Part shown: in pieces, positions 18,701 through 63,492 of the stretch
Layout of the letters: each line of letters opens with the position of its first letter
Numbering within the stretch: the stretch's first letter is position 1
Assembly: GCF_032191835.1 (NCBI RefSeq)
Contig: NC_083232.1
Coordinates: forward strand, 682,001-746,000
Reading direction: 5' to 3'
Length of the DNA stretch: 64,000 nt
Origin: Heteronotia binoei
Lineage: Eukaryota
Position numbers and translations under genes: made by a program
Notes under the pieces: generated by a model
The model's database searches: none
Told to the model about the DNA's origin: nothing
What the model saw: only the letters and a program-made list of their open reading frames with translations

Positions 18701-21700
18701 TTCTCTTTAATACTCTGACATGTTGAAAGTTTCATAGAGTTCTTCCATAAATATTCCCATGTATCCATCTGTATTTCTTTATTTACATTTATTGCCCATT
18801 TAATCATTTGAGATTTCACTACTTCATCTTCTGTAGACTATTTTAAAAGTAACTTGTAAGTTTTTGAAATTAATTTTTCATTATCATTTGTTAAATTGTT
18901 TACTGTCTTTCACAATCGGAATAGTTTGAAACAAATACATTATTCTCGGCAAAATATTCATCTTAATTGCAGCTATTCTTCCAAGCAATGACAAGCTTAT
19001 TCCATTTTATCATATCTTCATCCATTTTACGCCATAGCTTTTCATAGTTATTTTTGAACAGGTCAATATTCTTCATTGTTATTTCCACACCCAAATATTT
19101 TACTTTAGATGTAACTTCACATCCTGTTAGTCTCTGCAACTCCTTTTATTTACTTGCATATTTTTACATAAAAATTTTGATTTTTCTTTAGTAGCATAAA
19201 ATCCCGCCAGTTCTCCATATTCTTGTATTTTAGCTAACAACAAAGGTGTTACTTGTGTAGGATTTTCATTTATAAACATTATATCATCTGCAAATGCTCT
19301 GTATTTGTAAATAAACCCTTTAACTCTCAACCCTTCTATTTCTTTATCATCTTGTATTTGCATCAATAACATTTCAAGAGTCATTATAAACAACAAAGGT
19401 GAAAGCGGACAACCTTGTCTTGTACCTTTGCTGATTATCATTTCATCTGTAAGATCTGCATTTATACATAACCTTGCACGTTGTTCAGTATATATTGCCT
19501 TTATCATACATAAAGTTTTCCCCCAACTCTATTTTCTCCATTACTGCAAACATAAAGTCCCAGTTCAAATTGTCAAAAGCTTTCTCTGCATCCGCAAACA
19601 ATAATGCAACTTCCTTCTCTGGATGTCTTTCATAATATTCTACAATATTTACAACAGTTCTAATATTGTCTCTTATTTGCCTTTTAGGGAGAAATCCCGC
19701 TTGGTCTTCCTTTATGAAATTTATCAAATATTTGTTGTTCTGCCAAAATTCTTATATATATCTTATAGTCATTATTTAATAATGAAATTGGTCTATAGTT
19801 CTTTACATTCGTGACATCTCTATCTTCCTTAGGAATCAAAGAAATTACATCTTCCTTCCATGTATTTGGTATTTTCCCTTCTATTCCTATCATATTCATC
19901 AATTTTTGAAGTTTCAGTACTAATTCTTCTTTAAAAATTTTAAATTTTTTTGCCGTATATCCATCTGGCCCAGGTGCTTTCCCAATTTTCACTGCATTAA
20001 TTGCTGCTTCGATTTCTATTTTTTCAACTGGATCATTCAATTTTTTTTTTCATATATTCAGTTAAGGGTGCTATTTTAATCTTCTGAAAATACGCTTCCA
20101 TCCGTTCCTTCTTTACTTTAACACCTTTAAATAATTTAGCATAGTACTTGAAAAATTCTCTTTATTCCTTCTTGATCTACCATCTCTCTTCCATCAACCA
20201 CAATTTTATTAATAATTTTACTTCCTCTCTTTTTCTTCAGTTGCCAGGCCAATACTTTCCAGGTTTCTTCGCTCCCTCAAAGGACTTCTGTTGTAATTTT
20301 ATCAAATTCCATTCCAATTCCTTATTTAACAAATGTCTCATTTGTACTTGTAGTATTGTAATCTCCCTTATAATTTTCTTTTTCCCTGGCCTTTTCCTCA
20401 ATTCCCCTTCTTTTTTCTTTATTTCATTTTGAATGTCCAACATCTGTTTTTCTTTTGCCCTTTTGTCATTGTTTAATGTAATAAATATTCCTCTCATTAC
20501 GGCTTTATAAGCATCCCACACCATCTGAAATTCTATATAATCTTTATCATTTATTTGGAAGAAAGCTTTAGTTTCATTTTCTAGAGATGTCACCAATTCT
20601 TGATTTTGTAGTAAATCTTTATTTAATCGCCATCTTCTCACTTTTTTAGACAATTTTGTAATCCATAATATTGGGTTATGATCTGCACCTATCTTCGGTA
20701 AGATCTCTATTTTTTTAGTTATAAGGCCTAAGTCCTTTGTACCCCATAACATGTCAATTCTGGAAAAAGTATTATGTCTTGCTGAAAAAAATGTATAATC
20801 TCGTACTTCAGGATTAAATTTTCTCCATAAGTCTTCCAAGTTTTCTTGTTTAACCAGTTCAAAGAAGGATTTTGGCAATTTTCCTTCGTTATTATTTTTT
20901 TTCCCAGATCTGTCCAATGTATTCTGAATTGTTCCATTAAAGTCTCCCATAATCATGACCTGGTTGTATGTCACTTCATCAAGTTGTTTTATAATGTCTT
21001 TTAAAAAAACATCTTTTGCACCATTTAGTGCATACAGTCCCAATAATAAGGTTTTTTTCGCATTTATTATTACTTCTACTGTCACAAATCTCCCATCTTT
21101 ATCTTTAAATATTATTTTTGGGTCCAATTCTTGTTTAATATAAAAAATCACACCCCTTTTCTTCTGTTCAGCCAATGAAAAAAATTCCAGTCCCAACTGT
21201 TTATTCCATAAAAATTTATAATCCTTTTGTTTAATATGAACTTCTTGTAAGCAAATTATATTACAGTTTTGTTTTTTAATCCAATGAAATATTGCCTTTC
21301 TTTTTTGTGGTGAATTTAGTCCATTTACATTCCAAGATAATAATTTATAATCCATCATGGTGCAAATTCTTTATTTTCTTCATAAAATTTACGCAGCTCC
21401 TGTGTATTTGTAATTGTAATCCTTCTTCCTTGTAGCTAAAAGCTCAAACCTTCAGGTATTATCCATCTATACCTCATTCCATTGTCACATAGTTTTTCTG
21501 TTAATTTCTTATATGTTCTCCTGTCATTTATCACTTGTCTTGGCAATTCTTTCATTATTCTTACTCTGCTTCCTCCCACTATCAATGTCTTTTCAAGATT
21601 TTCCCCACCATTTCTTTTGTCATATATCTTATAACCACATCTCTTGGTAAGTTATTTTTCTTGGCATATGATGAATTCCCTCTATACATATAATCATACA

Positions 21701-24700
21701 TATTTCTAGTCCCTTCAGGATCTTCCTCCAAGAAATCAGCAATTATTTTTATTACATGTTTTTTTTAAGTCTGTCCCTTCTTCTTCAGGTACTCCTCTCA
21801 GACGTCTTTGTGTCTCCATCAATTTACAGTCATGGATTGTTATTTTTTTCTTGCATTTTTAATAAGGTGGAATCCTGGAGTTTAACTTTTCCTTCTACCT
21901 CCTGCACTTTTTTTGACACCACCACTGTTTCATTTCTAAGCTCTTCCATTTTTTTTAAAGTCCTCAATATCTTTTTAAAGTTTTTTTTTTGCAAGCATTT
22001 ATCATCTTTTCCACCCCTTTCATCATCCTAGCTTCCATTGCTTCCAACTGACCTTGCATCTTCTCCAATGAGGCGGCCCTTGCACGGGTTACCTTTGACT
22101 CTGACATTAAAAAAACAGCGAAAAATTTGATATCACCAAAATAAAGTTCAACTATCAGGTTTGATAGATTAGAAGTTGCCCTTTCAAATGAGCCTAATTT
22201 CGCCGTCCTCCGACCTTCCCAGGCTCAGATATTAATTTTTTAAAAATTTAGCCTCCCAATAATGGCCACTGATGTTTTTCTATGGTAATACAATCCTAGA
22301 GTAGGTCCACTTCTTCAAGTTACTTCCTGCTTTGCTTGCCCTAAGTCACGTTCTCACTGGTAACAAAGTCTCACGATACTTGACATATTTCCTGTGTTGA
22401 CTGTAGAAACTGCAGATCTCTGACGATGGTGCTTTCACTCCACGACCGCAGGTAGACAAAACAATAAATTCCTTTCCAATTTTTAACACTGTCCTTAATT
22501 TAACAAAGTCCAAAATTCACCCCTTCTCCTCTTCTTCTTCCAAGCTTTCAAACTTTCTCTTTCCCACCTTCTAATATTATTTTGTTTGCTTTAAAATAGT
22601 CCCGGAATGGTAGATAACAATCAGTACCTTTTTCTAAGGTTATTCAGATCAACACTGGTCTCATACAGCATCAGATGTTTAGCAGTCTCAAAGAAGATTA
22701 GGATCTTGTTAAGCTTATGTCAAGTAAATGACTCTGCAAGCTTCTGTAGATGATGAATGTGTAACTCTTCTCCGGGGATCCCTCAAAGTCTCAAAGGAGC
22801 CCCCCCGCCCGGGACTTCCTTTTAGCCAAGGTAAATCACCTCAAAGTTTCCTGTGCATATCTTGGACTAATTTCTCACTGAGAAAAGTAGGCAGAAGGCA
22901 AAAATCTGCCCTTTACTACCCCGAACAGAAGCTCCAGTCTGCCCCCCTTAGAGAGGCAGGTCAGCTCAGCATTCTCCAAATCCAGGAAGTCCCTCTTTTA
23001 ATTTAATTTCGACCCACTGGTTCTGGTCCTACCTTCTGGGGCCACAGAAAACAATTCCACACCATCATCATCAGGGGAGGGACGGTGGCTCAGTGGTAGA
23101 GCATCTGCTTGGGAAGCAGAGGGTCCCAGGTTCAATCCCTGGCATCTCCAAAAAAGGGTCCAGGCAAACAGGTGTGAAAAACCTCAGCTTGAGATCCTGG
23201 AGAGCCACTGCCAGTCTGAGAAGACAATACTGACTTTGATGGACCAAGGGTCTGACTCAGTATAAGGCAGCTTCATATGTTCATATGTTCATCTATAGGA
23301 CAGCCCTTCAAGTACTTGAAGACGGTGATTCTATCACCTCTCAGCCGCCTCCTCTCCAGGATAAACATCCCCAGCTCCTTCAACCTTTCCTCGTAAGACT
23401 TGGACCCCACACCCCGCACTATCTTCGTCGCCCTCCTCTGGACCCCTTCCAGCTTGTCTATATCTTTCTTAAAATGTGGTGCCAAGGTCACTCCAGCAGG
23501 GGCATGTGGAGGAGTGCGGAATAAACCCAGTTCTCTCAGATAAAAATCACAGAATCATGGATGGGACCTCCAAAGTCCAACCCCCTGCACAATCCAGGAA
23601 CTACACAAGTACCTCCCCACCACATCCTTTTTGTGCACTTAACCACTACACTTAATCGTTAGAAGATGATGATGATTAAAAATATATCGGATTTCAATCT
23701 TGCTCTTCACTCTGAATCTCAGAGTCTCAGAGCAGTCACAGTCTCCTTTCCCTTCCTCCCCGTCAACAGACACCCTGTGAGGTAGGTGGGGCTGAGAGAG
23801 CTCTCACAGCAGCTGCCCTTTCAAGAACAACCACCTCTGCAAGAGCTATGGATGACCCAAGGCCATTCCAGCAGCTGCAAGTGGAGGAGTAGAGAATCAA
23901 ACCCAGTTCTCCCAGATAGTCCACACACTTAACCACTACACCAAACTGGCTCCCTAACCACTACACCATGAACCATTTTATGTTATATCCCTGGCTTGGT
24001 GGGATGGGTGGGATATAAATCCCATCAATAAATAAATAAAATAAATAAATACACTGAACCAGAGTCAGTGAGGGATCTGGAGACCAAGTCCTATGAGAAA
24101 CAACTGAAGGAGCTAGCCTGGAGAGGAGACAAGTGAGAGGTTAGGAAGGACATTACTGACATTAGGAAGAACTTCCTGACTGTTAGAGCGGTTCCTCAGT
24201 GGAACAGGCTTCCTCAGGAGGTGGTGGGCTCTCCTTCTGTGGAGGTTTTTATGAAAACAGGCCAGATGGGCATCTGACAGCAAGACTGATTCTGGGAAGT
24301 CTGGCAGTTCGTGAGAAGGAGAGCAGGGAGAATTGCATCAGTGCTTAGATCTTGTGACCCCTTCTCATTTGCCCAGGGAAATGTTGTTTGCCACTTTGGG
24401 GTCAGCTAGCAACATTTCTCAATGCCAGCTTCCCCATAAATCCTGAAGGGTTTTTTTTTGCCATCTCCTGTGCTTGCAGCAGGGGTTACTGGGGGGGGGG
24501 GGGGAGAGATTTGTGAATTTCCTGCATTGTGCAGGGGGTTGGACTAGATGACCCTGGAGGTCCCTTCCAATTCTATGAATCTATGAAAGGTAAGGAGTGG
24601 GGACAAATGTCCTGATGGGGAAGTGAAAGCAAGAGCCCATCTCCAGCATGGGGAGCTCATGAGGCAGCAAAAGCGGCTGAGGGGATCCAGCCCCCCAACT

Positions 24701-51079: not shown

Positions 51080-52934
51080 CTCTTGCCGCTTCTCTTCCTG
51101 GATTGCGCTTTCTCTTGATGCCTGGAGCCCGGAGAAGGGCCTGCATTCCAGGAGCTCCCTCCAGAGCTCGTGAGAACGCCGTGGGCCATGATACTGGGCT
51201 GGCTCACAGGGCTGCTGGCAGGATCTCAACCGGGTCACACGTGGGAAACCCTGTGATCCCAGAATGGACCGCTCCCACGTGGTGGGAACTCCCTCCCGCT
51301 TCCTGATCATCCTGCGATCTCCTTGACGTGCAGCCCAGCTCTGCTGTCTGCCCTCCTGCTTTCTGCTGGGCCTCTATCCAGCGAGGAGGCTCTGCTGCCA
51401 GTCCTGGTCTGCATGTCCTCCGTGGGGCGCTCTTCTGCGTGGCCCCTCAGCCCCACTCCATCCTGCTTTTGGGCTTGCTTTGCAGCCCACTTTTTGCTCT
51501 CTCTGGCTTCTTTCTGCCCTGAAGGCAGGGACCAGGCCTCTTCCCTTGTGTCTTGTGTGTGTGTGAGAGAGAGAGAGCACAGACTGTGGGTTTTCACCCA
51601 GGCCACTGAGCTTAGCAGGTAAGAAGACCTGCCTTTGTCTGGCTGCCTGTCTGGAGCAGAGAGCCCGAAGAAGCAACAGCGAGGGGGTGGGGAGCTCTGC
51701 CAGGTCTTCTGCTGCATTGCACCCGGGCAGGTTGGGGGACCTGCTCTTCCTGGGGTGGGCTGGAGGTTCCTGGGGGCATCTCTGCAGTGCCAAAGCCTCC
51801 TCCCCCCAGTGCAAAATCTCTGCTCCTCATCCCCAGGCTGTGAAGGCACCAGCTTGCCAGCTGTTCCCCTGCAGGACTCTTTGGTGCCCCCCGGAGCCTG
51901 GCACGGCCTGTGCACCTGGCAGTGTTGGCACCAGAGGGTCTTGGAGCACCTGGAGCAGGAGAGGGCCCCCGGCAGCCCCTCGCGGATCGCTCAGGTGAGC
52001 AGATGGAACTGGAGGTGGGGGGGAGGCGGGATGCTGAAGCAAGCTTTGGAGAAGGGGAGGGCATAAGCAGGAAAGAAGCTGCTGCGGCTGGCTGTGCTCC
52101 TGTGTGCCACTGCAAGTGCCGCTTCACAGGACCCCTCCTGGCTCTGACTGGCTGCACAAACAGAGGCACAAGTCAGCTCAGGGGCGTGGCCAGGAAAGCC
52201 CTTCCAGGTGTCTTCGCTTTCTGTTTCCTGGAGTGATGGAGCCCCTCTTCTCTGCAGGTCTGCCCCCTTCACTGGCTCAGCTCAAAGGGCTGCGAAATCC
52301 CCTTTCTGGGAGGGGGAGCCTCTGCAGGCCTTGCCGGGACCAGAGCTCCTGCCCTCACTGGGGGGGCTGCCTGGCGATGCTGCCAGCTCGGCAGGGGTTC
52401 TGTCTTCAGCTGGTGCCCTCGCCTGGCACAGGGACGTTACAGAGTGCACCTCTTCCCTTTTGCCAGCCGCTGGCCTCTTTGCTGGTTGGGCACTGGCAGG
52501 TGGACGTAGCCCCCTCCCCAAGCTTCTGCTGCTGCAAATCTCTGCATTGGAGAAGCCCCCCAGTGCTGATGGGTGTGCTGGCTGTTTCTGGGCCTGGCCT
52601 CCCCTCCCCAAAACACACACGAACCCCAAGGGCAGTTTACGGCAGCCAGAAGGAAGCCTGAGAGCCGATCAGAGCAACTTGGTGTGCTCCGAAATGTCTC
52701 TGAAGGCTGCCTGCCTGGCTTCCAAGGGGGGCAGTAAAACTTCCCATGGTAAGCTGAGCGGGTGGGCTGCTGCCATCAGTGGGTGGGGAGGAAGCACAGC
52801 AGTTCCCCTCCCCTTTCTTCCCTGCCGGGGTTATATAGTCTCTCTCTCAGTCTGCCCACATCTCACCCCTCTGGAGGCCAATGAGGACTCTTGCAGGGAC
52901 TTCTGCTGCTGTTAGAGATGCCTGCAGAAGCAGA

Positions 52935-53635: not shown

Positions 53636-53664
53636 TGCTGAATGCGAGATGCCTTGTTTTTCAG

Positions 53665-53785
53665 GTGACCTTTGAGGACGTGGCAGTCTATTTCTCCCCA
53701 GAGGAGTGGGCAGAGCTGACGGCATGGCAGAAGGCCCTGTACTGGGAGGTGATGAAGGAGAACCACACCCTGGTGGCCTCTCTCG
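53665..53785 (+). CDS. KRAB-A box exon
   Basis: ttttcag|[41 protein letters not shown]|gtaagg; typical phase 0-1 KRAB-A exon. Confidence 0.92.
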
Positions 53786-56700
53786 GTAAGGGGCCGAGGG
53801 CTGCATCGTCCAGGGCAGGGGGGCTCTCCGAGAGGGCGGGGCGGAACTGCAGAGGCGCTGTGGCCCGTGGTGCTGGGGGAGCACCTGGCTTGGGCACCCG
53901 CAGGGCCACTAAGGGAGGTGTTTGGGCCAGGGCAGAGTGGTTCCTGGCTGAGCAGGAGGGCCGAGGCTTGAGTTCTCCTCCTGCTCTTCCCTTGGGTGGA
54001 CACCCCCCCGCCCCCTCGCAGGGCCTTGCCTTCTCTCCCACCCTCAGGTCAGTCTTCTGTGTTCTTTCCTCTGACCAGTGTCTGCACCTGACAGCCAGCC
54101 CGAGGCCCTGTGCCGGATCGCATGTGGGGAGGCCCCCCCCTCTGAGAACCCGCTCGGGGGGGAGAGGGAAGCCGCTCCCCGGGACCCCAACCCGGGTGAG
54201 TGATGCTGGGTGGTCCCTCATTGCGTTGAGAGGCATGGGGTGGGTGCTCTGTCTGCTGGAATGCGGCCCCCAAGGCTTCCCCTCTGTGCCGGAGGAGGGG
54301 GGGGTGCAGGGAACCCCTGCCTCTGGGCTAGCTGCTCTGCAGAGCCAGGAACACCCCCCCCTTTTTCACTCCCATCCTGCCTTCCTTGATGTGATGAATG
54401 CAACGTATGAGTAAGCAAATCACAGCGACTGGGGGATGGCAGGACAGAGGAGCCTATCAGAAAGTCCGGCAAAGCAAAAGGCTCGTCTGTGGCCACCCCC
54501 TCCCCTCCCCAGGTGGCAACGCAGAACGCCCGGCCTGGAGAAAGAGCAGAGATGCTCTTGCACAAAATTATGATGTTGAGAAATACGATCTTCCCAGAGC
54601 TCTTGCAAAGAGAGAGTGGGTGAAAGAGAGCTGATTGTACCAGTTTCTTGTGCCTCGTCTGGTCCAGCTTTGCCTGTCCTGGGGGTGGGGGCAGCATTTG
54701 CACACACGCATGCAGCCCACCCACCCCCACCCCAGACCTCCCTGCCAGAACACAGAAGCTGATGGGGCCTCCAAAGAGAGAGGCAGACAGGGGAGGCAGT
54801 GGCCAGAGGGCAGTGAGGTGTGGAAAGTGGACACACACGGTTGAGAAATCCCCCTGGGCGGGGAAATCAGCTGCCTCATCTGGTTGGAAGAGGCCCTCTC
54901 AGTTCTCTCCCCTGCTTCGTCTCTTGCTGCCCCTCCAGCTGTGGAAAGCTGGCAACAGAGTGCTGGAGGACCAAAGGGCTGGTGGACCAGAGCGGTTGCG
55001 CTTTTAGGGTTTAGCTCAGTTGTAGCATCCATATCAAACAATGGCGTGTATTTGCTTCAGACAAGCGCACATCTGTTTGACTTAACTGGTTGTCTGGCAT
55101 GGGGGCGCTGGTGCTTGTAAGCAGTTCCGCGTGTCTAGCAAAGGGTGCTCAGGCCTGGCTCTGAACTGCAGCTTTCCAGGGTGGGGGAGTGCTTAAGCCA
55201 TTACAGTCAGAACAACTTGAAAGTGTCTTAGGCATCATAAAGATCTCTCTCAGGATGGAGGCTGGTAGGCATTGAGTTGGTGGCAGGGAGGGCGGCTTTC
55301 AGCTCAACCCAGGGAGCCCCTCTGGGCTGAGCAGGGTCAACCCTGAACTGTCTGGCCCCCTTCTGGCGCACCCCCCCCCCACGGATAACATCACCGAGTC
55401 ACATGGAGGGTGCCCAGTTTGGCGCCCCCAGAAGGCCAGCACCCAAGAACACTCCCCTCCCCCCCCCGGCCATCCTTCCCCCTTCGCCAGGGCTCGCTTC
55501 TCCCCCAGCCTGGAGCACAAGGGCTGGTGCTGAGTGGGGCTTCCCTCCCTCCTGCAGGAGCTGGGACAGACGGCCCCTCTTCTTGGGTCAGACCAGCTGC
55601 CAGGGACGCCTCCCAGCCGGAAGGAGAGCAAGCGGGCAGGAAGAGTGACTCAGAAGAAGCGGGGCTGGAAACCCCCACTGCCCCCAGCCCCGGTGAGTGA
55701 CCCTTGGGGTTTGTGGCGAGGCGGGCCCCAGAGTCCCCAGGCTCCTCTTCTGGGGGGGGCAGAGCTGCCACTCAGGCATGCAGAGTAGGGAAGGCAGCCC
55801 CCTCCCTGCTAGCTGCCCCCCCCCCCAATTCCAGTGTGGCTGCGGCTCTGGATCACCAGGCTGAAGCCCACATGGGGGGGGTGCTAGGAAGGGGGGACAC
55901 CAGAACTCTTTGGGAAGAAGAGCTCAGCAGAGACAGCTGGGGGGGGGGGCTGCTGCTGACACATGAAGGGAGTCTTCCAACTGGGGCAGAGAGGACAGTG
56001 GGAGGGGGTCAGATCCTGGAGCCTGTGGGGCCCAGAGGGCTTGAGGTGGGGCAGGGGCCAGCAGGTCATCTCTGGGGTTCAGCTGAGGCTTCCTCTGGAG
56101 CGCCTGGAAGTGGAGAGGGAGGAGGCTCTTTCTGGCTGCAGGCTCCCCCGGGGCCTCCTGATTTGCCTCTTCTCTGGCTCCTCCCCCCGCAGGCCCCAAT
56201 CTCTGCATTAAGGTGGAAGAGGAGCCCCCCCACGACTGCCGGGAGTGTGGCCGGAGCTTCCCCGAGAGGGACGTGCTCATCTCCCACTTTGGCGAGCGAG
56301 CCCTGCCCTGCCCCGAGGGCGGGAAGTCGCTGGGCAGTCCCGGGAGCCTGGCCGCCCACCGGAAGGCTCCCCGCCAGGAGCAGTGCCTCTTCACCTGCGT
56401 CGCCTGCAAGGGCAGCTTCGTCTACGAGGAGCAGGAGGCCGGGCGGATCCGTGCGCAGCTGGCCCTGGGGGAGCTCTTCAAGTGCTTCAGCTGCAGCTGC
56501 CACATCCCCCTCGCCCTGGACCAGAAGGGGGACGTGCTCCACGGCTCCCTGCCCTTTGGGCAGCCAGACAGCATGTACTACAGGTGCGGAGGGGACTGCA
56601 CGGGAGTGGAGTCGGGCTGGGCTGCAGGAGTCCACAGGGAATCGTGCAGGTGTAGAGTTGGAAGGGACCTCCAGGGTCATCTAGTCCAACCCCCTGCACG

Positions 56701-59700
56701 ATGCAAGAAACTCACAAACACCTCCCCTCCCCTCCCCTCCACACCCGCCCAACGAGCCCTGCTCCACGGAGTCTTTAAGGAGGTTCTGAATATGGAGGGG
56801 AGCGAGTTTGGGGGAGGGTTCGTTTCCCCCCCCTTTAGTGAAGCCATGGGCTTCCATGGTTGTGAAGCTTGCACACCCAGGGTAGGCAACCGGGAGGAGG
56901 GGTGGTAGGCCTGTGACAGTCAAGGTGCTGAGACAGAACCTCCATTTGCCTCTGAATAGGAGCGCTTTGAGAGAAGTGACTGGGGAGAGCCTGTGTCCTG
57001 CTTGCCAGCTCCTGAGACTGGCTGTGCTTGGGACTTCTTTTTCAGGGCTGCCATTACGTTCTGGGAAAGGAGTCTGGCTATTTCCTGGCTCCCAGAGGAG
57101 GGGCCTGCCCTTTTGGGTCATTCCAGCTGATCCAAAGACAGCAACACTGGTTTGGGCAGCACATGAAAAAGCCGTTCAACCCTAGAGCCCATGGCCAGGG
57201 AGGCTGCCCAGGGCTCTTGGAAGCAAGGGAGGGGCCGTGGCTGCTGGAGCGGAAGGGTCTGAGGCTGAAGGGGAAAGGCCTTTCCCTGCTGCCGCCCTCC
57301 AGAGGTGAGACCAGTGTCCTGCCTGACCCTTCGTTCTGGCTCTCAGGCACACCTCCCAAGCAGTTGACCCCCGGCCCAATGACCACAGGTGTCTCTCAGA
57401 CCAGTCCTTTGGGAACATTCCTATAAGGACAAAAGAGAAGCCATGTTGGATCAGGCCAGTGGCCCATCCAGTCCAACATTCTGGGCCAAAACCCAGGGGC
57501 CATCAAGAGGTTCACTAGCAGGGCCAGAATGACTGAAGCCCCCCCTCCCCAGCACCAAGAAGACAGAGCATCATTACCCCAGACATAAGAGAAGCCCTTT
57601 TGGATCAGGCCAGCACTCTGCATCACACAGTAGCCGAAGCCCAGAGGCCGCCCAGAGGTCCCCCAGCGGGGCCTTGAGGCCAGAGCAGAGCCCAGAGGCT
57701 CAGGTGCCTGAAGAAAGGCAATTGGTCTAATCCTCACTGTGTTCCCATCTGCAGAAATTTAAATCCACAGACGGGGGCCGTGGAAAGAGGAGTGGGGCTT
57801 TGTTTCCTTTTTACCAACTGGGGGGGTCTTCAGAAAAATCGGGGGTGTTTCCCCTTCCCAGATGGGCCTCTATCAGCCACCTTCCTTCATCCCTCCCTCC
57901 TTCCCTTCCTGCAGCCACCAGCAAGCACTGGATCAGGTCCGCCAGCGGGCAGCTCACTGGACCATCTCAGAGACCAAAGCCTTCGTGGAGCTCTGGGGGG
58001 ACAACTGCGTCCAGACAGCGCTCTTTGACAACTACCGCAACGAGGTGCAGTACAAGCGGCTGTCGGAGAGGATGGGGAAGCTGGGCTTCCACCGCAACCT
58101 GGAGCAGTGCCGGCAGCGGGCCAAAGACTTGCGGAGGGGCTTCAAGGAGCTCAAGGACGGCCACCTGCACTCCAACCGGGCGCGCCAGACCATGCCTTTC
58201 TTCCCCCTCCTCGACCGCTTCCTGATGATCAGCCGGGGGCTGGTGATCCCCAAGGTGTGTGCCAACCGCGCCAGGCAGAAGGGCCGGAGGGGCCGGAGCC
58301 GGAGGGAGGAGCTGCCCAGAGAGCAGCCCCTCGTGCTCCTGCTGTCCCCCGGCGGCTCAGACTTGCACCGCCTCCCTCTCTCGGACCGGGACCGCTATGT
58401 CCACGCACTGGGGCTCCCCGGCTACCAGCTCCCGATGCCCGACCAGGTGGCAAGCCTTCCTGACTACAAGGTGCGGCTGCCCAAAGAAGATGCCAGGGGC
58501 CACGTGAGGGGGGTGCCCAGCTACCAGCTGCTGAGGCACGGTGACGCCTCGCTTCCCTGTGCCGCGGGACTCTCTGACTTCCCCCTACGGCTGCAAGACC
58601 AAGATGCCTCCTGCGTGCCCAGCCGCCTGCAGCAGCAAGAGGTGGCACTGGCTCCCCCCATCAACGGGCTCTCTGCCGCCAGCAGCCTCTGGCAGGAGAT
58701 GACTTCTGGCGCTCCCGAGCGCCCGGCCAGCACCGCAGCCCAGGGGAGCGTGCAGGGTAAGTGGGCCACCTCCTCTTGCCCCTGCCAGGGCCGGGGGGGA
58801 GCTGCGCTCAGGGCCTGGGCCAAAGAGGCCTCAGCAGTGCTCAAGCTGCGGGGGGGAGGGGGGGGAAGAGCAGGTTCTTCCTGTGCTCCTGCACGTTGGC
58901 CTCACCTTCTCACAGTCTCTAATGCACACCTCTACCCGCTGCCCCAAAAGACCTGCACTGGCTTCTTTTCCTAGCGCATCACAGGGCTGCTTGCCATTTT
59001 TTGCTGTGTTCGGGGGAAAGGTTTGTTTAAGGGCCCTTCAGAGGTTCTGGCTCTGCTGATGTATCCCTCTGCCACCCACCCCTCCTTTTGCAAAAACAGA
59101 CCCAGATAGGAAAAGGCAGGAGGCAGGAATACGTGGGAATTCCTGCTGGAACAGGGAGAGAGGCGCTAGCAGACAGGGTCTCTTCTGCTGGGGTCCCTCT
59201 GAAAAAGCACCACTCGGGAATCTCCAAAGAACATCTAGACTGACCCGTTAAGAAGGCAGCACAGCATGAAGAGCAAGAGCAGCTGGCAGGTGGAAGCAGC
59301 GGAGTCAGCTGGGGGGGGAGGCCCTCGGGCTTTGCTGGGGGGTCTGAGTCTCCCCCGGGCAACCAGTGCCATAAACTCCTTTGAGCTTAGGAAAATGTTT
59401 TCCAATCCATTTTATATTTTCAAGAACGAGAGAGAATGATCTTTGGAGACATGAATGAGGTAATGGTTCCTATGAAGAAATGCATTATTCTCCTGAGATG
59501 TTGGCATGCAGGAAAACTCCCCCCGCCCATCCCCGCCATGTGCATTCCCCCCCCCCCCCCACCTCTGGGCTGGAAAGATGGAAGTCAGCATGTCGTGAGC
59601 TTCCAGGCTCACCTTCTTACAAATGCCAGTTGAGCTAGCAGGACAGACAGTGGGATGGTTAAACGCCCCCCTTCTCCAAGCAGGGAGGCCAGCGTGTGGT

Positions 59701-62441
59701 GCTGTCAAATGCCAGAGAGCCTTTAGGGAGACAGGAAAAGGTGCCTTGGCGGACCTGGGTCAAGGGGCAGGGAAAGAGACTGGATAACATTCCTTGCAAC
59801 AGGAAGAGAAGGGCTCTTGCCGCTGGTCCATCAGGGGAGACTGACCTCTGACCTGAGGTCTAGGGAAGGTGGCCAGCCTAGAGGGCTCATGGACTCTTGA
59901 CATTGCAAAAGGTAATTGTGATCTGCAAAGCTTTTGGTTGTGTCTTTGCACTCTCTAGGATTAATAGCTAAGGTTTTTATATCAGTCCTTGAATATGTTT
60001 GGTGTCTGTTGGAAAAGAAAGTATAGTCCTTACACCTGGCTGGCTCCACCTCCTTTCAGTGTAGCAGCAGTCAGACTGTGAGGCCTCCATTGGGTCCAAC
60101 GTACTTGCTTGAGTCCAATTTATATTTTTTTTGGGGGGGGGAGTGAGATTTAGGGGGAGGGCTTGAAGATCAGAGGCCTTTTAAAATCTCCTTTTGCCCT
60201 GGATGCAGGAATGTGCACTCTGTACATGTTCATGCTCTTTTTGCTGTCACCTAAGATGGTATGGGGCAGTTTCAAACAGGCAACCAGCTAGGTAATGTGA
60301 GGCAGAATTTGCCATTTTAGTACCTATTGTTACTCTGTAATTTTAGATTTTATATATTTTAAATTGGGTTTTCCCTGCTGATTGTTTTAATGATGTAACG
60401 CACCCTGAGTCTGCTCTGCAGGAAGAGTGGGCTGAAAGCTGAATAAAATAAATAAAAATAATGCTGAGAGAAGAATTTGGGAGGGGAAACCCCAGTTGAG
60501 TAGCCCTTTCAAAATGACAGCAAATGTATTGCTATAGGATTCGGGGGTTCTTTGGGGGGTGTACTAAAAGGAATGACTGGATTACCCATTGGAAACAGCG
60601 GGAGAGGTTTGAAGGCCCATTAGAGATAATGGGAACCAGGAATGCCAATCGACTTGCATGCGCTCCATTGGAAAACACTGAGCTCAAGAAAAGTTGCAAA
60701 GAAAATGTGGAATGGATTTTCTGCTAAGGTCTCTTGAGTCCAGATAGGCTACTCTGGAACTGGAATGACAGACCCCCAGAATGGAATAACAGCCCCTGGG
60801 AGCAAAGTTAAGAAAGTTCAAAGTAGCTTAGTGTTTATTTCAGTTCCTCTGTATGTCTTATGCCAGTACTCCAGTTGATTCATTGTTGTACCTTCATGTG
60901 CTGCTCAAAACCATAATTTCCCACTGTCCAAAATCCCAGGAAATGATCTCTCTTCTTGTTCAGTCTTAAATCCTGGGAATCATGAACTTTGCTGCAGATA
61001 TTCAAAGAGTATTTTTACTGAAGCAAATTGTACTAACTAAGCGAAGCCAAAACAATGTATTTGTAATGGGTAGTGAGAGGGAAAAAATGAAAAAGGTGGT
61101 TGGATTCAAAAGGGGATTGAAAAAGGGCAAAACGAAATCCAGGTACGAGGCCCAGAGCCGCGCAGCAAAGTGGTGCTGAAATCCAAAGCAGTGGCAGCAA
61201 CTAACCCTTGGATTGTTTTCTGCCTCGCAGGGTGGCATCCAGGGAAAGCCCCGAGCTCCTCTGCCAAGCGCATGCGTGACCTCCGCTTGCGCCGCAGAAG
61301 GCAGCGGGCAGCGATGGCGCGGGTCTTGCTGGGGGCCAGTTATCGTCCAAATGACCGGACAGTGTGGAGCAAGACCCAGAAAACAGACTGGTGGGACAAC
61401 CTGCTCGCCGGCCAGTTTGACAACCATGAGTGGGTCCGTTACTTCCGCATGTCCCGGGACGCGGTGCTGGAGCTGGTCGAGAAGCTGCGGCCTGTGCTGC
61501 AGCGGGAGGACACCAACATGCGCGCAGCCATCCCCGTGGACAAGCGTGTGGCCCTCACGCTCTGGAAGCTCGCCACCTCAGACAGCTACAGATCTGTGGC
61601 CAACCAGTTTGGCGTCGGGGTGTCCACTGCATCTGTCATTGTGATGGAGGTGTGTGAGGCAATCCACGACGTGCTGCTGAAGCACGTTGTGCGGCTGGGA
61701 GACACGCAGGCTGTCATGGAAGGCTTTGACAGGGTCGGCTTCCCCAACTGCCTGGGGGTGGTGGATGAGACCCACATTCCCATCCTGTGTTCCCCCCACG
61801 GAGCCTCTGCCTACATCAATGGGAAGGGGCTGGTCTCCATGGTTCTGCAGGCCCTGGTGGACAGCGCTGGCCGGTTCATGGACGTGTACGCAGGCTGGTC
61901 TGGCGGGATGCAGGACTCCGGGCTGCCCTGGGGCTCCCCCCTCTTTGAGCGGATGGAGAAAGGCACTTTCGGTCCCCAGAGCACCACAGAGATTGAAGGC
62001 GTGGTCATGAGCCCAGTCCTGCTGGGAGGGCCCGCGTGTCCCCTGCGACCGTGGCTCATGACACCCTACCCCGAGGCCAGCAGCGAGCCCCGAGAGCGCT
62101 TCAACGCCATCTTGCACAAGTGCCGCATGGCCGTGACCTACGCCTTTGAACGGCTGAAAGGGCGCTGGCGGTGCCTCCTCAAGCGCCTGGATGTGGCAGA
62201 GAAGAACGTCCCGCTGGTGATTGTGGCCTGCTGCATCCTGCACAACATCTGCGAGACCCGGAACGAGGCCATGCAGGAGGGCTGGGAGGAGGGAATGGAC
62301 TATGCCGATCTGCCCTCAGCCACCTCGGAGAGCCCTGTGGACAGCAGCTGGGAGGCGGAAGAGGCAGGGGAGGCCCACTGCATCCGCGAGGCCTATTGCG
62401 CTCTCTTTGAAAAGAGGCGGCAGCAGGAGGAAGGGCTGTGA
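53665..62441 (+). CDS. Predicted KRAB / degenerate zinc-finger / Myb-SANT / Harbinger DDE-nuclease fusion gene (6 exons, 938 aa from KRAB-A; N-terminal exons unresolved)
   Basis: Exons 53665-53785 (phase 0-1), 54079-54195 (1-1), 55558-55692 (1-1), 56193-56583 (1-2), 57915-58756 (2-1), 61231-62441 (1-stop). All have pyrimidine-tract AG acceptors and GT donors; total 2817 nt with no internal stop. Confidence 0.75.
54079..54195 (+). CDS. KRAB-B-like exon
   Basis: ctgaccag|(V)[39 protein letters not shown]|gtgagt; [13 protein letters not shown] resembles KRAB-B PDLISRLERGEEP; phase 1-1. Confidence 0.65.
55558..55692 (+). CDS. Low-complexity linker exon
   Basis: ccctcctgcag|(G)AGTDGPSSW...[10 protein letters not shown]|gtgagt; phase 1-1, open frame. 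Confidence 0.6.
56193..56583 (+). CDS. Exon with degenerate C2H2 zinc fingers and CxxC pairs
   Basis: cccgcag|(G)[46 protein letters not shown]...LAAHRK...[10 protein letters not shown]...FKCFSCSCH...MYY AG|gtgcgg; phase 1-2. Confidence 0.75.
56652..56720 (-). repeat. CR1 3' end
   Basis: TAGAGTTGGAAGGGACCTCCAGGGTCATCTAGTCCAACCCCCTGCAC. Confidence 0.75.
57424..57700 (-). repeat. LINE 3' end of the same family as the 44.5-45.2 kb array
   Basis: AGAGAAGCCATGTTGGATCAGGCCAGTGGCCCATCCAGTCCAACA... Confidence 0.7.
57915..58756 (+). CDS. Myb/SANT-like (Myb_DNA-bind_4/trihelix type) DNA-binding domain exon
   Basis: [14 protein letters not shown]...[42 protein letters not shown]...[13 protein letters not shown] fits the Harbinger/MSANTD/ZSCAN29-type Myb pattern. 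Acceptor ttcctgcag at 57914; donor G|gtaagt after 58756. Confidence 0.88.
61231..62441 (+). CDS. PIF/Harbinger (HARBI1/ALP1-like, DDE_Tnp_4) nuclease exon, intact frame, catalytic site degenerate
   Basis: [95 protein letters not shown]. Acceptor ttttctgcctcgcag at 61230 gives phase 1 in this frame; TGA at 62439-62441. Confidence 0.93.
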
Positions 62442-62693
62442 CAGTGGGGGGAGAGGGAGGAGTGGGGGTTTGTGTGTGTGTGCTGTCCCTTCCCAGCTCT
62501 GGTTTCACTCAAAAGGACGGGGTGGGCTTACTCAGGTGACATGCCCCTCTGGTGTCCCTACTTCTTGGGGAAAAGGGACAGTCCACAGGGCGGCAAAGTC
62601 CGCCTTTTACCGGTTGCACTGTTTGACCTTTTATAAGCCTTTTATAAAAATCTTCTTCGCTTGAGGTAGTCAACTTTCATCCAGAGTCTCTCC

Positions 62694-62699
62694 AATAAA
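62694..62699 (+). terminator. Polyadenylation signal of the fusion gene
   Basis: AATAAA about 250 nt after the stop codon. Confidence 0.6.
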
Positions 62700-62870
62700 T
62701 GGTTTTCTTCTTCTTCTTCTTCTTCCACTGAGTCACCTTTAAAACCTGCTGGGTCCTGAACTAGCTCAGCTTCCTCCCCAAGAACAGAAGAAGACAAAGG
62801 AGTTTGTCAGCTGCTCTGAGTCTCTGATTCAGAGAGACGGGCGGGGTATAAACCTGCAATTCTTCTTCTT

Positions 62871-63492
62871 CAGGGGGGAGGAACCTTTTTTCTGCCAAGG
62901 GCCATATGGATATTTATAACATCATTCGTGGGCCATAAAAAATTATCAACTTAAAAAACAGTGCTCTGCCGAGAGAATGCAAATAATTGTTTTTCTATTT
63001 GAAGTCATGTGGGGGAGAGCTTAATCTGGCGCGTGCGCATGCACACACACACACGGCCTGCCGCCCTAGGCAAATGCATAAGTCCAGGGCTTTTTTGTAG
63101 AAAAAGCCCAGCAGGAACTCAGTAGCATATTAGAGCACATCCCCTAATATTAGCATATTAGGTCACACCCTCATTAGCATCTTAGGCCACACCCTCTGGG
63201 ATAATCAAGTGAAAACTGAACTGTGACAGTAACTTTTCCAGGCCCTGCAGCAATTCTGGCCGGCCAGCCAGGCTCCAGGGAGGCTGCTGCACAGTACATC
63301 TGGGCGCTGTGACCCCTGCCTGGTCCTGGGGAGGCTGCTGCACGGTGTGGCTGGGCCCCATGATCCTCGCTGGTCAGCCAGGCCCCAGGGAGGCTGCCAC
63401 ATGGCTCGGTTCAGTCCAGCAATCCCCAAGGTCCACACCAAGTGACCTCAAGGGCCGTATATGGACCTCGGGACGGAGGTTCCCCACCCCTG
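62871..63492. mobile_element. hAT-type MITE with nested repeat fragments
   Basis: CAGGGGGGAGGAACC (62871) pairs with GGTTCCCCACCCCTG (63478-63492), followed by TCTTAGAG. Confidence 0.55.

What the first reader, a model, noticed from the sequence alone, without database searches (positions are those of the whole stretch)
61231..62441. The Harbinger nuclease looks catalytically dead but structurally preserved
Seen: the first two acidic residues are kept (GVVDETH; GGMQDS), but the family motifs GD-x-xYPL and VE-x-AFG-xLK read GGPACPL and VTYAFERLK, so the additional conserved Asp is Gly and the catalytic Glu is Thr. The HTH region, WLMTPY and CCILHNICE remain. Known: the domesticated plant Harbinger nuclease ALP1 also has a broken triad and acts as a chromatin-complex scaffold. 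Inference: a pseudonuclease kept for protein or DNA binding. It resembles sauropsid Harbinger transposases more than HARBI1, implying an independent domestication.
Basis: partly seen in the sequence, partly recalled or inferred. Interest (0 to 1): 0.7.

Follow-up and report, generated by a model that had tools for sequence, protein, structure and literature searches.

The report
Dead Harbinger nuclease in lizard fusion gene
This stretch is the last exon of an old lizard and gecko gene that fuses a repressor (KRAB) domain, a Myb DNA-binding domain and a jumping-gene (Harbinger) enzyme; the enzyme part has lost a key DNA-cutting residue yet is the most strictly conserved part, a familiar pattern for a tamed transposase.

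Summary
Observation confirmed. Every quoted motif is at 61231-62441(+). In the Harbinger (DDE_Tnp_4) triad, D1 (61764-66) and D2 (61914-16) are kept. The catalytic Glu column is Thr (ACC, 62136-38).

The change is fixed: 17 ortholog sequences from 15 squamate species show T, S or A there. In 184 other homologs the column is E in 157 of 170. Two lineages have also lost D2.

The ORF is not a stand-alone gene. It is the terminal exon of a six-exon KRAB / C2H2-ZNF / Myb-SANT / Harbinger-transposase fusion gene. An RNA contig joins 58756 to 61231 (GT..AG, in frame). Annotated proteins of 881-1263 aa in geckos, skinks, lacertids, amphisbaenians, iguanians and Varanus are colinear with the window's exons. 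The gene sits in conserved synteny between an ABC transporter and a ribosomal S12/S23 gene. No TIRs were found.

The transposase exon has dN/dS 0.07-0.16, and 0.056 around the dead active site. The AlphaFold model is confident (pLDDT 84), with an HTH and an RNase-H-like core.

Best reading: a domesticated pseudonuclease serving as scaffold or DNA-targeting module of a KRAB repressor. It is publicly annotated only as "uncharacterized LOC". It is not among the KRAB-Harbinger fusions listed by Cosby et al.; the gene IDs differ.

The scan has noted other, different Harbinger-derived genes elsewhere in this genome. Verdict: new member of a known kind, moderate interest.

The parts
61231..62441 (+). 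Terminal coding exon: Harbinger/PIF transposase-derived domain (DDE_Tnp_4) plus stop codon TGA at 62439-62441
   Evidence: ORF; Pfam; acceptor site; RNA contig starts here; 87-90% identical to the C-terminal 400 aa of annotated squamate fusion proteins
61233..61352 (+). First 40 codons of the exon ([28 protein letters not shown]...): basic, NLS-like segment. It is conserved upstream of the first ATG (61272), so it is read through from the Myb exon
   Evidence: dN/dS 0.012; identical in all orthologs
61422..61691 (+). Helix-turn-helix region (residues about 64-153 of the exon)
   Evidence: HTH_Tnp_4 1.2e-4, below cutoff; helices in the AF2 model; matches to sigma-factor region 4 HTH at Z 5-6.4; dN/dS 0.071
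61701..62273 (+). RNase-H-like transposase core (residues about 157-347)
   Evidence: AF2 pLDDT mostly above 90; piggyBac Z 9.2, Tn5 Z 9.1, integrase cores Z about 6
61764..61766 (+). First catalytic Asp (GVVDETH), retained
   Evidence: D in all 17 ortholog sequences
61914..61916 (+). Second catalytic Asp (GGMQDS), retained here. It is Ala in Varanus (NCBI model) and in the Logan species
62028..62030 (+). Gly in place of the conserved non-triad Asp of the GD-x-AYPL motif
   Evidence: G in all orthologs; D in 169 of 184 other homologs
62136..62138 (+). Thr (ACC) in the catalytic Glu column ([13 protein letters not shown])
62148..62150 (+). Glu four residues after the lost Glu. This is the only candidate for a shifted acidic residue
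   Evidence: E in 15 of 17 ortholog sequences, G in Varanus; also present in 14 homologs that keep the canonical E
62442..62676 (+). Conserved 3' UTR; AATAAA/ATTAAA signal at 62694
   Evidence: blastn similarity to L001 runs to 62647; RNA contigs reach 62676; signal
58757..61230 (+). Phase-1 intron (GTAAGT ... CAG) between the Myb exon and the transposase exon
   Evidence: RNA contig X3 record 10 lies on 58183-58755 and then on 61230-62328; splice-site sequences; not alignable to L001
57915..58756 (+). Myb/SANT-like (Myb_DNA-bind_4) exon, related to the Myb-like ORF of a turtle Harbinger copy
   Evidence: Pfam 1.2e-15; RNA contigs; colinear with orthologs; 31% identity, E 3e-13 to the Myb ORF in L006. 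The exon start is inferred from the acceptor and from zero RNA depth upstream; the tool masks 57874-57914
56180..56581 (+). C2H2 zinc-finger exon (approximate bounds), degenerate in this gecko
   Evidence: tblastn with P0121, P0122 and P0126; alignment; no Pfam hit for the window copy
54078..54185 (+). Small exon after the KRAB box (approximate)
   Evidence: tblastn with P0126
53656..53787 (+). KRAB box exon (approximate bounds)
   Evidence: Pfam KRAB 2.2e-20; tblastn and alignment
51797..52000 (+). N-terminal coding exon (approximate)
   Evidence: tblastn with P0126, P0122 and P0121
37056..41995 (+). Exons of the upstream ABC-transporter neighbour (synteny marker, not part of the gene)
   Evidence: tblastx HSPs of 78-90% identity to the ABC gene upstream of the orthologs in L003 and L004; gene tables

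Best explanation
Window 61231-62441(+) is the last coding exon of a single-copy, squamate-wide host gene. The protein runs N-terminal region, KRAB box, (degenerating) C2H2 fingers, Myb/SANT-like domain, long linker, then a Harbinger/PIF transposase domain. The transposase domain keeps its HTH and RNase-H-like fold but cannot form the canonical D-D-E metal site, because the Glu is Thr/Ser/Ala in every ortholog and the second Asp is also gone in two lineages. So it is most likely a pseudonuclease. Shown: exon structure, in-frame splicing to the Myb exon, orthology and synteny, fixation of the substitution, and strong purifying selection that is strongest on this exon. Inferred: the dead transposase core is kept as an interaction and DNA-recognition platform. 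In active Harbinger elements the transposase binds the Myb-like partner that recognises the element ends. Here the two are covalently linked and coupled to a KRAB domain. The protein would then act as a sequence-specific KRAB/TRIM28-type transcriptional repressor or chromatin adaptor, as shown for other KRAB-transposase fusions.
For: Pfam DDE_Tnp_4, Myb_DNA-bind_4 and KRAB. The spliced RNA contig runs 58755|61230, with GT..AG sites and a continuous frame. The window exons are colinear with 13 annotated fusion proteins. Synteny is ABC transporter / gene / ribosomal S12-S23 in Gekko, Hemicordylus, Sphaerodactylus and the window. Only coding parts align to the L001 contig of a distant species. 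No TIRs and no second copy in the window. Triad table. dN/dS is 0.07-0.16 for this exon against 0.30-0.54 for the Myb exon, and 0.056 around D1-D2 and around the lost Glu. The clade has support 0.999 with stem 0.39 and tips 0.07-0.21. The AF2 model has pLDDT 84.2 and pTM 0.81, with best structural matches to DDE transposases and integrases. One mutation in the Ping DDE triad cuts excision about 150-fold (PMC2836001). ALP1 is a precedent (PMC4671723). KRAB-transposase fusions are known as repressors (Cosby et al., bioRxiv 10.1101/2020.05.07.082677).
Against: No enzymatic or binding data exist. D1 is invariant, and D2 is kept in 13 of 15 species. A Glu one helical turn later is kept in all species but Varanus. 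The active-site surroundings are as constrained as the rest of the domain. A non-canonical activity or a metal- or DNA-binding role of the old active site is therefore not excluded. The AF2 confidence comes from an alignment dominated by intact relatives, so it is weak proof of fold retention. The KRAB-to-Myb exon junctions in this genome rest on homology to annotated models, not on reads. RNA depth is low. The repressor role is inferred from architecture alone.
Confidence: 0.75

Rival explanations
1. The domain is still an active nuclease or recombinase that uses a non-canonical site: D, D plus the Glu four residues downstream, or the Thr/Ser hydroxyl.
For: D1 is invariant and D2 is present in 13 of 15 species. 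The E at +4 is present in 15 of 17 ortholog sequences but in only 14 of about 168 other homologs. dN/dS is 0.056 in both active-site segments. T and S, both hydroxyl residues, alternate at the old Glu position.
Against: Varanus reads D-A-A and has Gly at +4. The Logan species reads D-A-T yet shows dN/dS 0.07 against the window. The +4 Glu also occurs with an intact canonical Glu in the P0004-P0009 group, so it predates the loss and does not compensate for it. Single triad mutations cripple Ping transposase (PMC2836001).
Confidence: 0.08
2. It is a decaying or recently inactivated two-gene Harbinger transposon copy (Myb ORF plus transposase ORF) that merely lies next to a KRAB-ZNF gene.
For: Myb-like and transposase ORFs lie side by side, as in Harbinger elements. 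A turtle copy (L006) has both genes between candidate TIRs. Gene callers on the Logan contig called them as separate genes.
Against: No TIRs were found. The locus holds the same position between the same neighbours in at least four species spanning Gekkota to Scincoidea. There is no sequence similarity outside the exons. The two ORFs are spliced in frame. dN/dS is about 0.1 at dS up to 1.0. There is one ortholog per annotated species.
Confidence: 0.02
3. The gene is one of the already catalogued KRAB-Harbinger fusions (KHARBID1 or HARBID-G2 of Cosby et al.), or a HARBI1 orthologue or duplicate.
For: Same lineage (squamates or Toxicofera), same domain combination (KRAB plus Harbinger DDE), and a similar dN/dS of 0.04-0.08 in their Table S3. 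Databases auto-name relatives 'HARBI1' or 'ALP1-like'.
Against: The Pogona ortholog is LOC110082590. KHARBID1 is Pogona 110070590 and HARBID-G2 is 110091519. None of the gene IDs 110082590, 107118608, 114607153 or 118092265 occurs in Table S3, which also lists no Myb domain for these entries. A SCAN-KRAB-DDE protein (P0205) that fits HARBID-G2 is only 45% identical and reads D-D-K. The top 120 hits are all sauropsid, and none looks like a vertebrate-wide 350-aa HARBI1.
Confidence: 0.07

Closest known systems
KRAB-Harbinger host-transposase fusion genes of reptiles (KHARBID1-4, HARBID-G1-3; Cosby et al., bioRxiv 10.1101/2020.05.07.082677, Table S3)
   Same: A Harbinger DDE_Tnp_4 domain is spliced in frame to a KRAB (or SCAN) host gene. 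The genes are squamate or archosaur lineage genes in fixed positions, with dN/dS of 0.04-0.08.
   Different: The gene IDs differ. This gene also contains the Harbinger-type Myb/SANT domain and C2H2 fingers. It is found from geckos to Varanus, so it is at least as old as crown Squamata. The paper's main text does not mention catalytic residues of these genes.
Arabidopsis ALP1 (and ALP2), domesticated PIF/Harbinger transposases (PMC4671723, PMC7282668)
   Same: A Harbinger transposase-derived protein with non-conservative substitutions in the DDE triad (DGA in ALP1), conserved under selection, and acting as a non-catalytic component of a chromatin complex (PRC2).
   Different: These are plant proteins of independent origin and stand alone. 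ALP1 lost the 2nd and 3rd triad residues, whereas here the 3rd is lost (plus the 2nd in two lineages). No KRAB, ZNF or Myb is fused.
HARBI1 / NAIF1 pair of jawed vertebrates (Kapitonov & Jurka 2004 and Sinzelle et al. 2008, as summarised in PMC9392472)
   Same: Both proteins of a Harbinger element, the transposase and the Myb-like partner, were domesticated and still interact.
   Different: They are two separate genes present across vertebrates. By my own recollection, not tested here, HARBI1 keeps its DDE triad. The present gene is squamate-only, covalently links both parts, and lacks the Glu.
HDP1/HDP2 (Arabidopsis, PMC5339849) and the Drosophila DPLG/Myb-like co-domestications (PMC9710019)
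   Same: Recurrent co-retention of the transposase-derived and Myb-derived Harbinger proteins as a functional pair in chromatin regulation.
   Different: The genes are separate, the lineages and partner complexes differ, and there is no KRAB.
Active two-gene Harbinger transposons of sauropsids (e.g. Chelydra copy L006; P0020 family, 80 members)
   Same: 45-50% identity in the transposase domain. The Myb-like ORF is 31% identical to the Myb exon. Same HTH plus core layout.
   Different: The TE copies have D-D-E, candidate TIRs (L006 5793-5809 / 10652-10668), convergent gene orientation and many copies. The window gene has none of these.

Membership tests
PIF/Harbinger transposase superfamily (descent) | Significant full-length match to the DDE_Tnp_4 profile | tested here: met
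   2.6e-20, 73 bits against a cutoff of 24.8, profile 1-158/158. The score is lower than for intact relatives (98-103 bits).
PIF/Harbinger transposase superfamily (active member) | Intact D-D-E catalytic triad | tested here: not met
   The window reads D-D-T. Orthologs read T, S or A at the Glu column. 134 of 184 other homologs are DDE.
PIF/Harbinger transposase superfamily (active member) | Terminal inverted repeats and multiple copies | tested here: not met
   No credible TIR pair around 52-64 kb. There is one copy in the window and one ortholog per species. Genome-wide copy number could not be searched.
Host-transposase fusion (HTF) gene sensu Cosby et al. | Transposase domain spliced in frame to host-derived domains, with RNA support | tested here: met
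   The Myb-to-DDE junction is seen in an RNA contig and is in frame. The KRAB, ZNF and Myb exon order rests on colinearity with 13 annotated proteins. The KRAB junctions were not seen in reads here.
Host-transposase fusion (HTF) gene sensu Cosby et al. | Syntenic orthologs in species more than 50 My apart, with dN/dS below 1 on the transposase domain | tested here: met
   Synteny. dN/dS 0.07-0.16 with bootstrap upper bounds at most 0.21.
Domesticated pseudonuclease (ALP1-like class) | Catalytic residue loss fixed across orthologs while the domain stays under purifying selection | tested here: met
Domesticated pseudonuclease (ALP1-like class) | Demonstrated absence of nuclease or transposase activity and a non-catalytic role | not testable with these tools
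   Needs biochemistry and genetics.
KHARBID1 (Cosby et al. Table S3) | Same locus as Pogona GeneID 110070590 / Anolis 103280956 | tested here: not met
   The Pogona ortholog is LOC110082590. None of this gene's IDs is in Table S3. A change in gene-ID history cannot be excluded.
HARBI1 orthologue | Stand-alone gene of about 350 aa, present across jawed vertebrates and nearest to HARBI1 in a tree | tested here: inconclusive
   The architecture (fusion), the distribution (squamates only) and the nearest relatives (sauropsid Harbinger proteins) argue against it. No verified HARBI1 sequence was available for a direct tree.
KRAB zinc-finger repressor | KRAB box that recruits TRIM28, plus a DNA-binding array | tested here: inconclusive
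   The KRAB box scores 2.2e-20. The C2H2 fingers are degenerate in this gecko (no Pfam hit; Cys and His losses). TRIM28 binding is not testable here.

The most novel reading that the evidence does not exclude
Both proteins of one ancient Harbinger element (the Myb-like end-binding protein and the transposase) were captured together into a KRAB gene in the squamate ancestor. They have persisted for about 200 My as a single-chain 'fossil transpososome'. In this reading the nuclease-dead core is the obligate platform that positions the Myb domain on Harbinger-type end sequences, so KRAB silencing is aimed at Harbinger-derived repeats or at genes that have co-opted them. No single-chain Myb plus transposase domestication of this superfamily turned up in the literature I could search.
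Probability: 0.3. Interest if true: 0.65.

Novelty: new member of a known kind. Interest (0 to 1): 0.45.

Why it matters
Domesticated transposases are a recurrent source of new regulators, but few Harbinger-derived ones have been studied (HARBI1/NAIF1, ALP1/2, HDP1/2). This gene adds a squamate-wide case. In it the catalytically disabled transposase core is the most conserved part of a KRAB/Myb fusion protein, which argues that the RNase-H-like core itself has a selected non-catalytic role, not only its DNA-binding partner. It offers a tractable test of what a dead Harbinger core does, whether that is Myb docking, dimerisation or DNA or chromatin recognition. It also fills a gap in the published catalogue of host-transposase fusions.

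Tried and rejected
(1) TIR search across 52-64 kb found only low-complexity or chance pairs.

(2) PDB sequence search found no relative (best E 0.2, spurious). Foldseek against the PDB gave only weak hits with E at or above 0.019, though all were transposases or integrases. VIA-align was needed to get Z about 9.

(3) I first suspected the gene was KHARBID1 of Cosby et al. I rejected this on gene IDs.

(4) The first protein search missed all full-length orthologs because of its length filter. They were found only with a longer first sequence or a long query.

(5) The look-up of encoding contigs had no record for P0121 or P0124, so Rhineura and Zootoca DNA are absent from the dN/dS analysis.

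(6) Maximum-likelihood pairwise dN/dS timed out, so NG86 with bootstrap was used instead.

(7) I checked the sister protein P0012 (king cobra) as a possible snake ortholog or source TE. It is a single intact-DDE gene between NUFIP2 and a TMEM219-like gene, with no Myb neighbour, so it is neither.

(8) A shifted triad using the Glu at +4 is considered unlikely, because Varanus lacks that Glu and it co-occurs with the canonical Glu elsewhere.

Full report
**1. What is at the coordinates**

- The + strand holds an uninterrupted ORF at 61170-62441 (423 codons from a GTG; first ATG at 61272).
- Pfam gives a full-length DDE_Tnp_4 match (2.6e-20, profile 1-158 of 158) and a sub-threshold HTH_Tnp_4 match.
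  - GVVDETH, with D at 61764-61766.
  - GGMQDS, with D at 61914-61916.
  - GGPACPL, with G at 62028-62030.
  - VTYAFERLK, with T (codon ACC) at 62136-62138.
  - WLMTPY and CCILHNICE.
- The window contains no N.

**2. Is the triad really broken?**

- I aligned 194 retrieved homologs plus the window to one HMM.
- Among the 184 sequences outside the orthologous clade, the three columns read D (168), D (167) and E (157 of 170 with a residue); 134 sequences are D-D-E.
- The third column sits in the motif R-x3-E-x6-K (CRMVVECAFGRLK). By my own knowledge this is the IS4/IS5-type signature that holds the catalytic Glu.
- The window reads D-D-T.
It is outside the triad and is also G or N in other lineages, so I give it little weight.
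- Published work shows that one triad mutation (D295A) in the rice Ping transposase lowers excision about 150-fold (PMC2836001).
- ALP1 carries DGA instead of DDE (PMC4671723).

**3. The ORF is an exon, not a gene**

- DNA similarity to a 5.5-kb Logan contig of a distant species (L001) begins at 61233, upstream of the first ATG.
- The peptide [13 protein letters not shown] that precedes that ATG is invariant in all orthologs.
- Base 61231 follows a textbook acceptor (ttgttttctgcctcgcag|G).
- Upstream, an ORF at 57862-58974 carries a Myb_DNA-bind_4 domain (1.2e-15). It has a CAGG|GTAAGT donor, so the exon ends at 58756.
- Laid RNA data gave one contig (run X3, record 10, 1657 nt) that lies on 58183-58755 and continues directly at 61230-62328.
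- Because base 58756 and base 61230 are both G, this equals an intron at 58757-61230. The intron is phase 1 and joins the two reading frames (g + gg = Gly).
- RNA depth is zero at 57694-57890 and between the exons.
- Expression is low: word depth is about 7, and raw reads give 1-6x at 6% sampling.

**4. The whole gene and its orthologs**

- The first protein search only considers proteins of similar length. It found a Logan protein (88%), an Anolis UniProt model (79%) and a Varanus model (71%), then nothing above 55%.
- Searching with a profile whose first row is long, and then with a long orthologue restricted to its C-terminal region, revealed annotated proteins of 881-1263 aa. They come from:
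  - Gekkota: Gekko, Eublepharis, Sphaerodactylus.
  - Scincoidea: Hemicordylus, Tiliqua.
  - Lacertoidea: Zootoca, two Podarcis, Rhineura.
  - Iguania: Sceloporus, Pogona, Phrynocephalus.
  - Anguimorpha: Varanus.
- All carry KRAB, Myb_DNA-bind_4 and DDE_Tnp_4, and most carry C2H2 fingers.
- The window's exons are colinear with them:
  - about 51797-52000 (N-terminal exon).
  - 53656-53787 (KRAB).
  - about 54078-54185 (small exon).
  - about 56180-56581 (ZNF).
  - 57915-58756 (Myb).
  - 61231-62441 (transposase).
- In Gekko, Hemicordylus and Sphaerodactylus the gene lies between an ABC transporter on the same strand and a ribosomal S12/S23 gene on the opposite strand.
- The window has the ABC exons at about 37-42 kb.
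- There are no TIRs and no second copy in the window.
- No snake protein appeared in either long-protein search.

**5. Fixation and selection**

- Across 17 ortholog sequences, the old Glu column is T (12), S (3: Gekko and both Podarcis) or A (2: both Varanus models).
- D1 is invariant.
- D2 is Ala in Varanus (NCBI model) and in the Logan species, where the protein was seen in three contigs of two runs.
- Pairwise NG86 dN/dS for the transposase exon among five species is 0.07-0.16, at dS 0.39-1.0.
- Bootstrap 95% intervals are 0.09-0.21, 0.06-0.12 and 0.05-0.10.
- The Myb exon as a whole scores 0.30-0.54.
- Within the transposase exon:

| Segment | dN/dS |
|---|---|
| First 40 codons | 0.012 |
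| HTH region | 0.071 |
| D1-D2 segment | 0.056 |
| Helix with the lost Glu through CCILHNICE | 0.056 |
| Insertion loop | 0.16 |
| C tail | 0.25 |

- Outside the exons the two most distant genomes no longer align.
- The disabled active-site region is therefore among the most constrained parts of the protein.

**6. Phylogeny**

- I ran a FastTree analysis of 169 sequences, rooted on three fish proteins.
- The orthologs form a clade with support 0.999, a stem of 0.39 substitutions per site and tips of 0.07-0.21.
- This pattern fits a burst of change at domestication followed by slow evolution.
- The sister (support 0.93) is a king-cobra protein with an intact triad (P0012). It is a lone gene between NUFIP2 and a TMEM219-like gene.
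- Deeper nodes are poorly supported (0.63).
- All of the top 120 hits are sauropsid.
- I had no verified HARBI1 sequence, so the statement 'not HARBI1' rests on architecture, distribution, synteny and nearest neighbours.

**7. Structure**

- AlphaFold2 on a 100-sequence alignment gave pLDDT 84.2 and pTM 0.81.
- The model has an N-terminal helical/HTH part and a beta-beta-beta-alpha-...-alpha core. D178 lies on the first strand and T302 on the long helix 285-311.
- Foldseek found nothing significant in the PDB, but its top rows are all DDE transposases or integrases.
- VIA-align gave piggyBac Z 9.2, Tn5 Z 9.1, Tn4430 TnpA Z 8.3 and integrase cores Z about 6 on residues 157-347. It gave sigma region-4 HTH domains Z 5-6.4 on residues 64-153.
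- These values are at or only just above the tool's stated background, so they support the fold class and nothing more.
- The prediction leans on intact relatives in the alignment.

**8. Origin of the Myb exon**

- A turtle Harbinger copy (L006, family P0020 with 80 members) carries three features:
  - a transposase at 6001-7275(+);
  - a Myb-like ORF at 10454-10164(-) that is 31% identical to the window's Myb exon (E 3e-13);
  - a 17-nt inverted pair at 5793-5809 / 10652-10668 enclosing both.
- So the Myb exon is of Harbinger type.
- Whether both parts came from one insertion is not shown. The orientation differs from the fusion gene.

**9. Comparison with the literature**

- Cosby et al. catalogued host-transposase fusions, including KRAB-Harbinger genes in squamates (KHARBID1, HARBID-G2) with dN/dS 0.04-0.08.
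- The Pogona ortholog of the present gene is LOC110082590.
- Their entries are Pogona 110070590 and 110091519. None of this gene's IDs occurs in their Table S3.
- A SCAN-KRAB-DDE protein (P0205) that fits HARBID-G2 is 45% identical and reads D-D-K.
- Full-text searches for the LOC names found no paper.
- The gene is thus publicly predicted but, as far as I could search, undescribed.
- The scan's own notes list other, different Harbinger-derived genes in this genome, and a note on this same window proposing the fusion. I used these as leads only.

**10. Mechanism**

- Shown:
  - exon structure;
  - splicing to the Myb exon;
  - orthology;
  - fixation of the Glu loss;
  - strong constraint.
- Inferred: the core no longer cuts DNA. 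It is kept as the partner surface for the Myb domain, and perhaps as a dimerisation and DNA-recognition module, of a KRAB repressor.
- The zinc fingers are decaying in geckos: the window copy has no Pfam hit, has lost Cys and His residues, and is absent from the Gekko model. This shifts the likely DNA-targeting role to the Myb and transposase parts.
- The main rival is residual non-canonical catalysis. It is kept at about 8% because D1, D2 and a nearby Glu are mostly conserved.

**11. Verdict**

- The object is a new member of a known kind: a domesticated, nuclease-dead Harbinger transposase inside a KRAB fusion gene.
- Its noteworthy architecture holds both Harbinger proteins in one chain.
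- Interest is moderate.

Noticed in passing
window 56180-56581: The C2H2 finger exon is degenerating in this gecko. The first finger lacks the 5-residue stretch with the second His, the second finger has CPQC changed to CPEG, and the exon has no Pfam hit. The Gekko japonicus model lacks the exon, while Eublepharis and the non-gecko lizards keep fingers that score.
   Followed up: partly
window 57300-57600 and 62800-63200: These stretches have RNA word depth of 10^4-10^5 and hundreds of raw reads, with many 'goes back' joints at 57423-57483. They look like high-copy, transcribed interspersed repeats flanking the gene's exons. The transposase exon itself shows only a single contig per run.
   Followed up: no
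protein searches: No snake ortholog of the fusion gene appeared, although many snake genomes are annotated. The gene may have been lost or strongly remodelled in Serpentes. This was not checked at the DNA level.
   Followed up: no
L005 8001-9356 (Ophiophagus hannah): The sister protein P0012 has an intact D-D-E. It is a lone single-exon gene between NUFIP2 and a TMEM219-like gene, and its 90% cluster has 44 members. Inverted repeats of about 300 nt (5926-6241 against 11932-12247, about 80% complementary) flank it. It may be another domesticated gene or a remnant element.
   Followed up: partly
proteins P0031, P0042 and relatives (Podarcis, Pantherophis): A separate squamate Harbinger-derived group reads G-E-E at the triad columns (7 sequences) and also has Gly in the GD motif. 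Thamnophis P0011 and the gecko P0101 group read G at the Glu column. Loss of catalytic residues is recurrent among sauropsid Harbinger-derived genes.
   Followed up: no
P0205 (Sceloporus undulatus LOC121922960): This SCAN-KRAB-DDE_Tnp_4 protein reads D-D-K at the triad and is 45% identical to the window domain. It probably corresponds to the HARBID-G2-type fusion of Cosby et al.
   Followed up: partly
L006 5793-10668 (Chelydra serpentina): This looks like a complete two-gene Harbinger copy. The transposase is at 6001-7275(+), a convergent Myb-like ORF is at 10454-10164(-), and a 17-nt inverted pair (94% complementary) lies at the ends.
   Followed up: partly
orthologs, old Glu column (window 62136-62138): The replacement residue is almost always a hydroxyl amino acid: Thr in 12 sequences, and Ser in Gekko and Podarcis. 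This hints that the position is still used, for example for hydrogen bonding or phosphorylation. Only Varanus has Ala.
   Followed up: no
window 16000-23000: An AT-rich island (GC 0.31-0.39, strongly negative GC skew) sits inside an otherwise 55-64% GC window.
   Followed up: no
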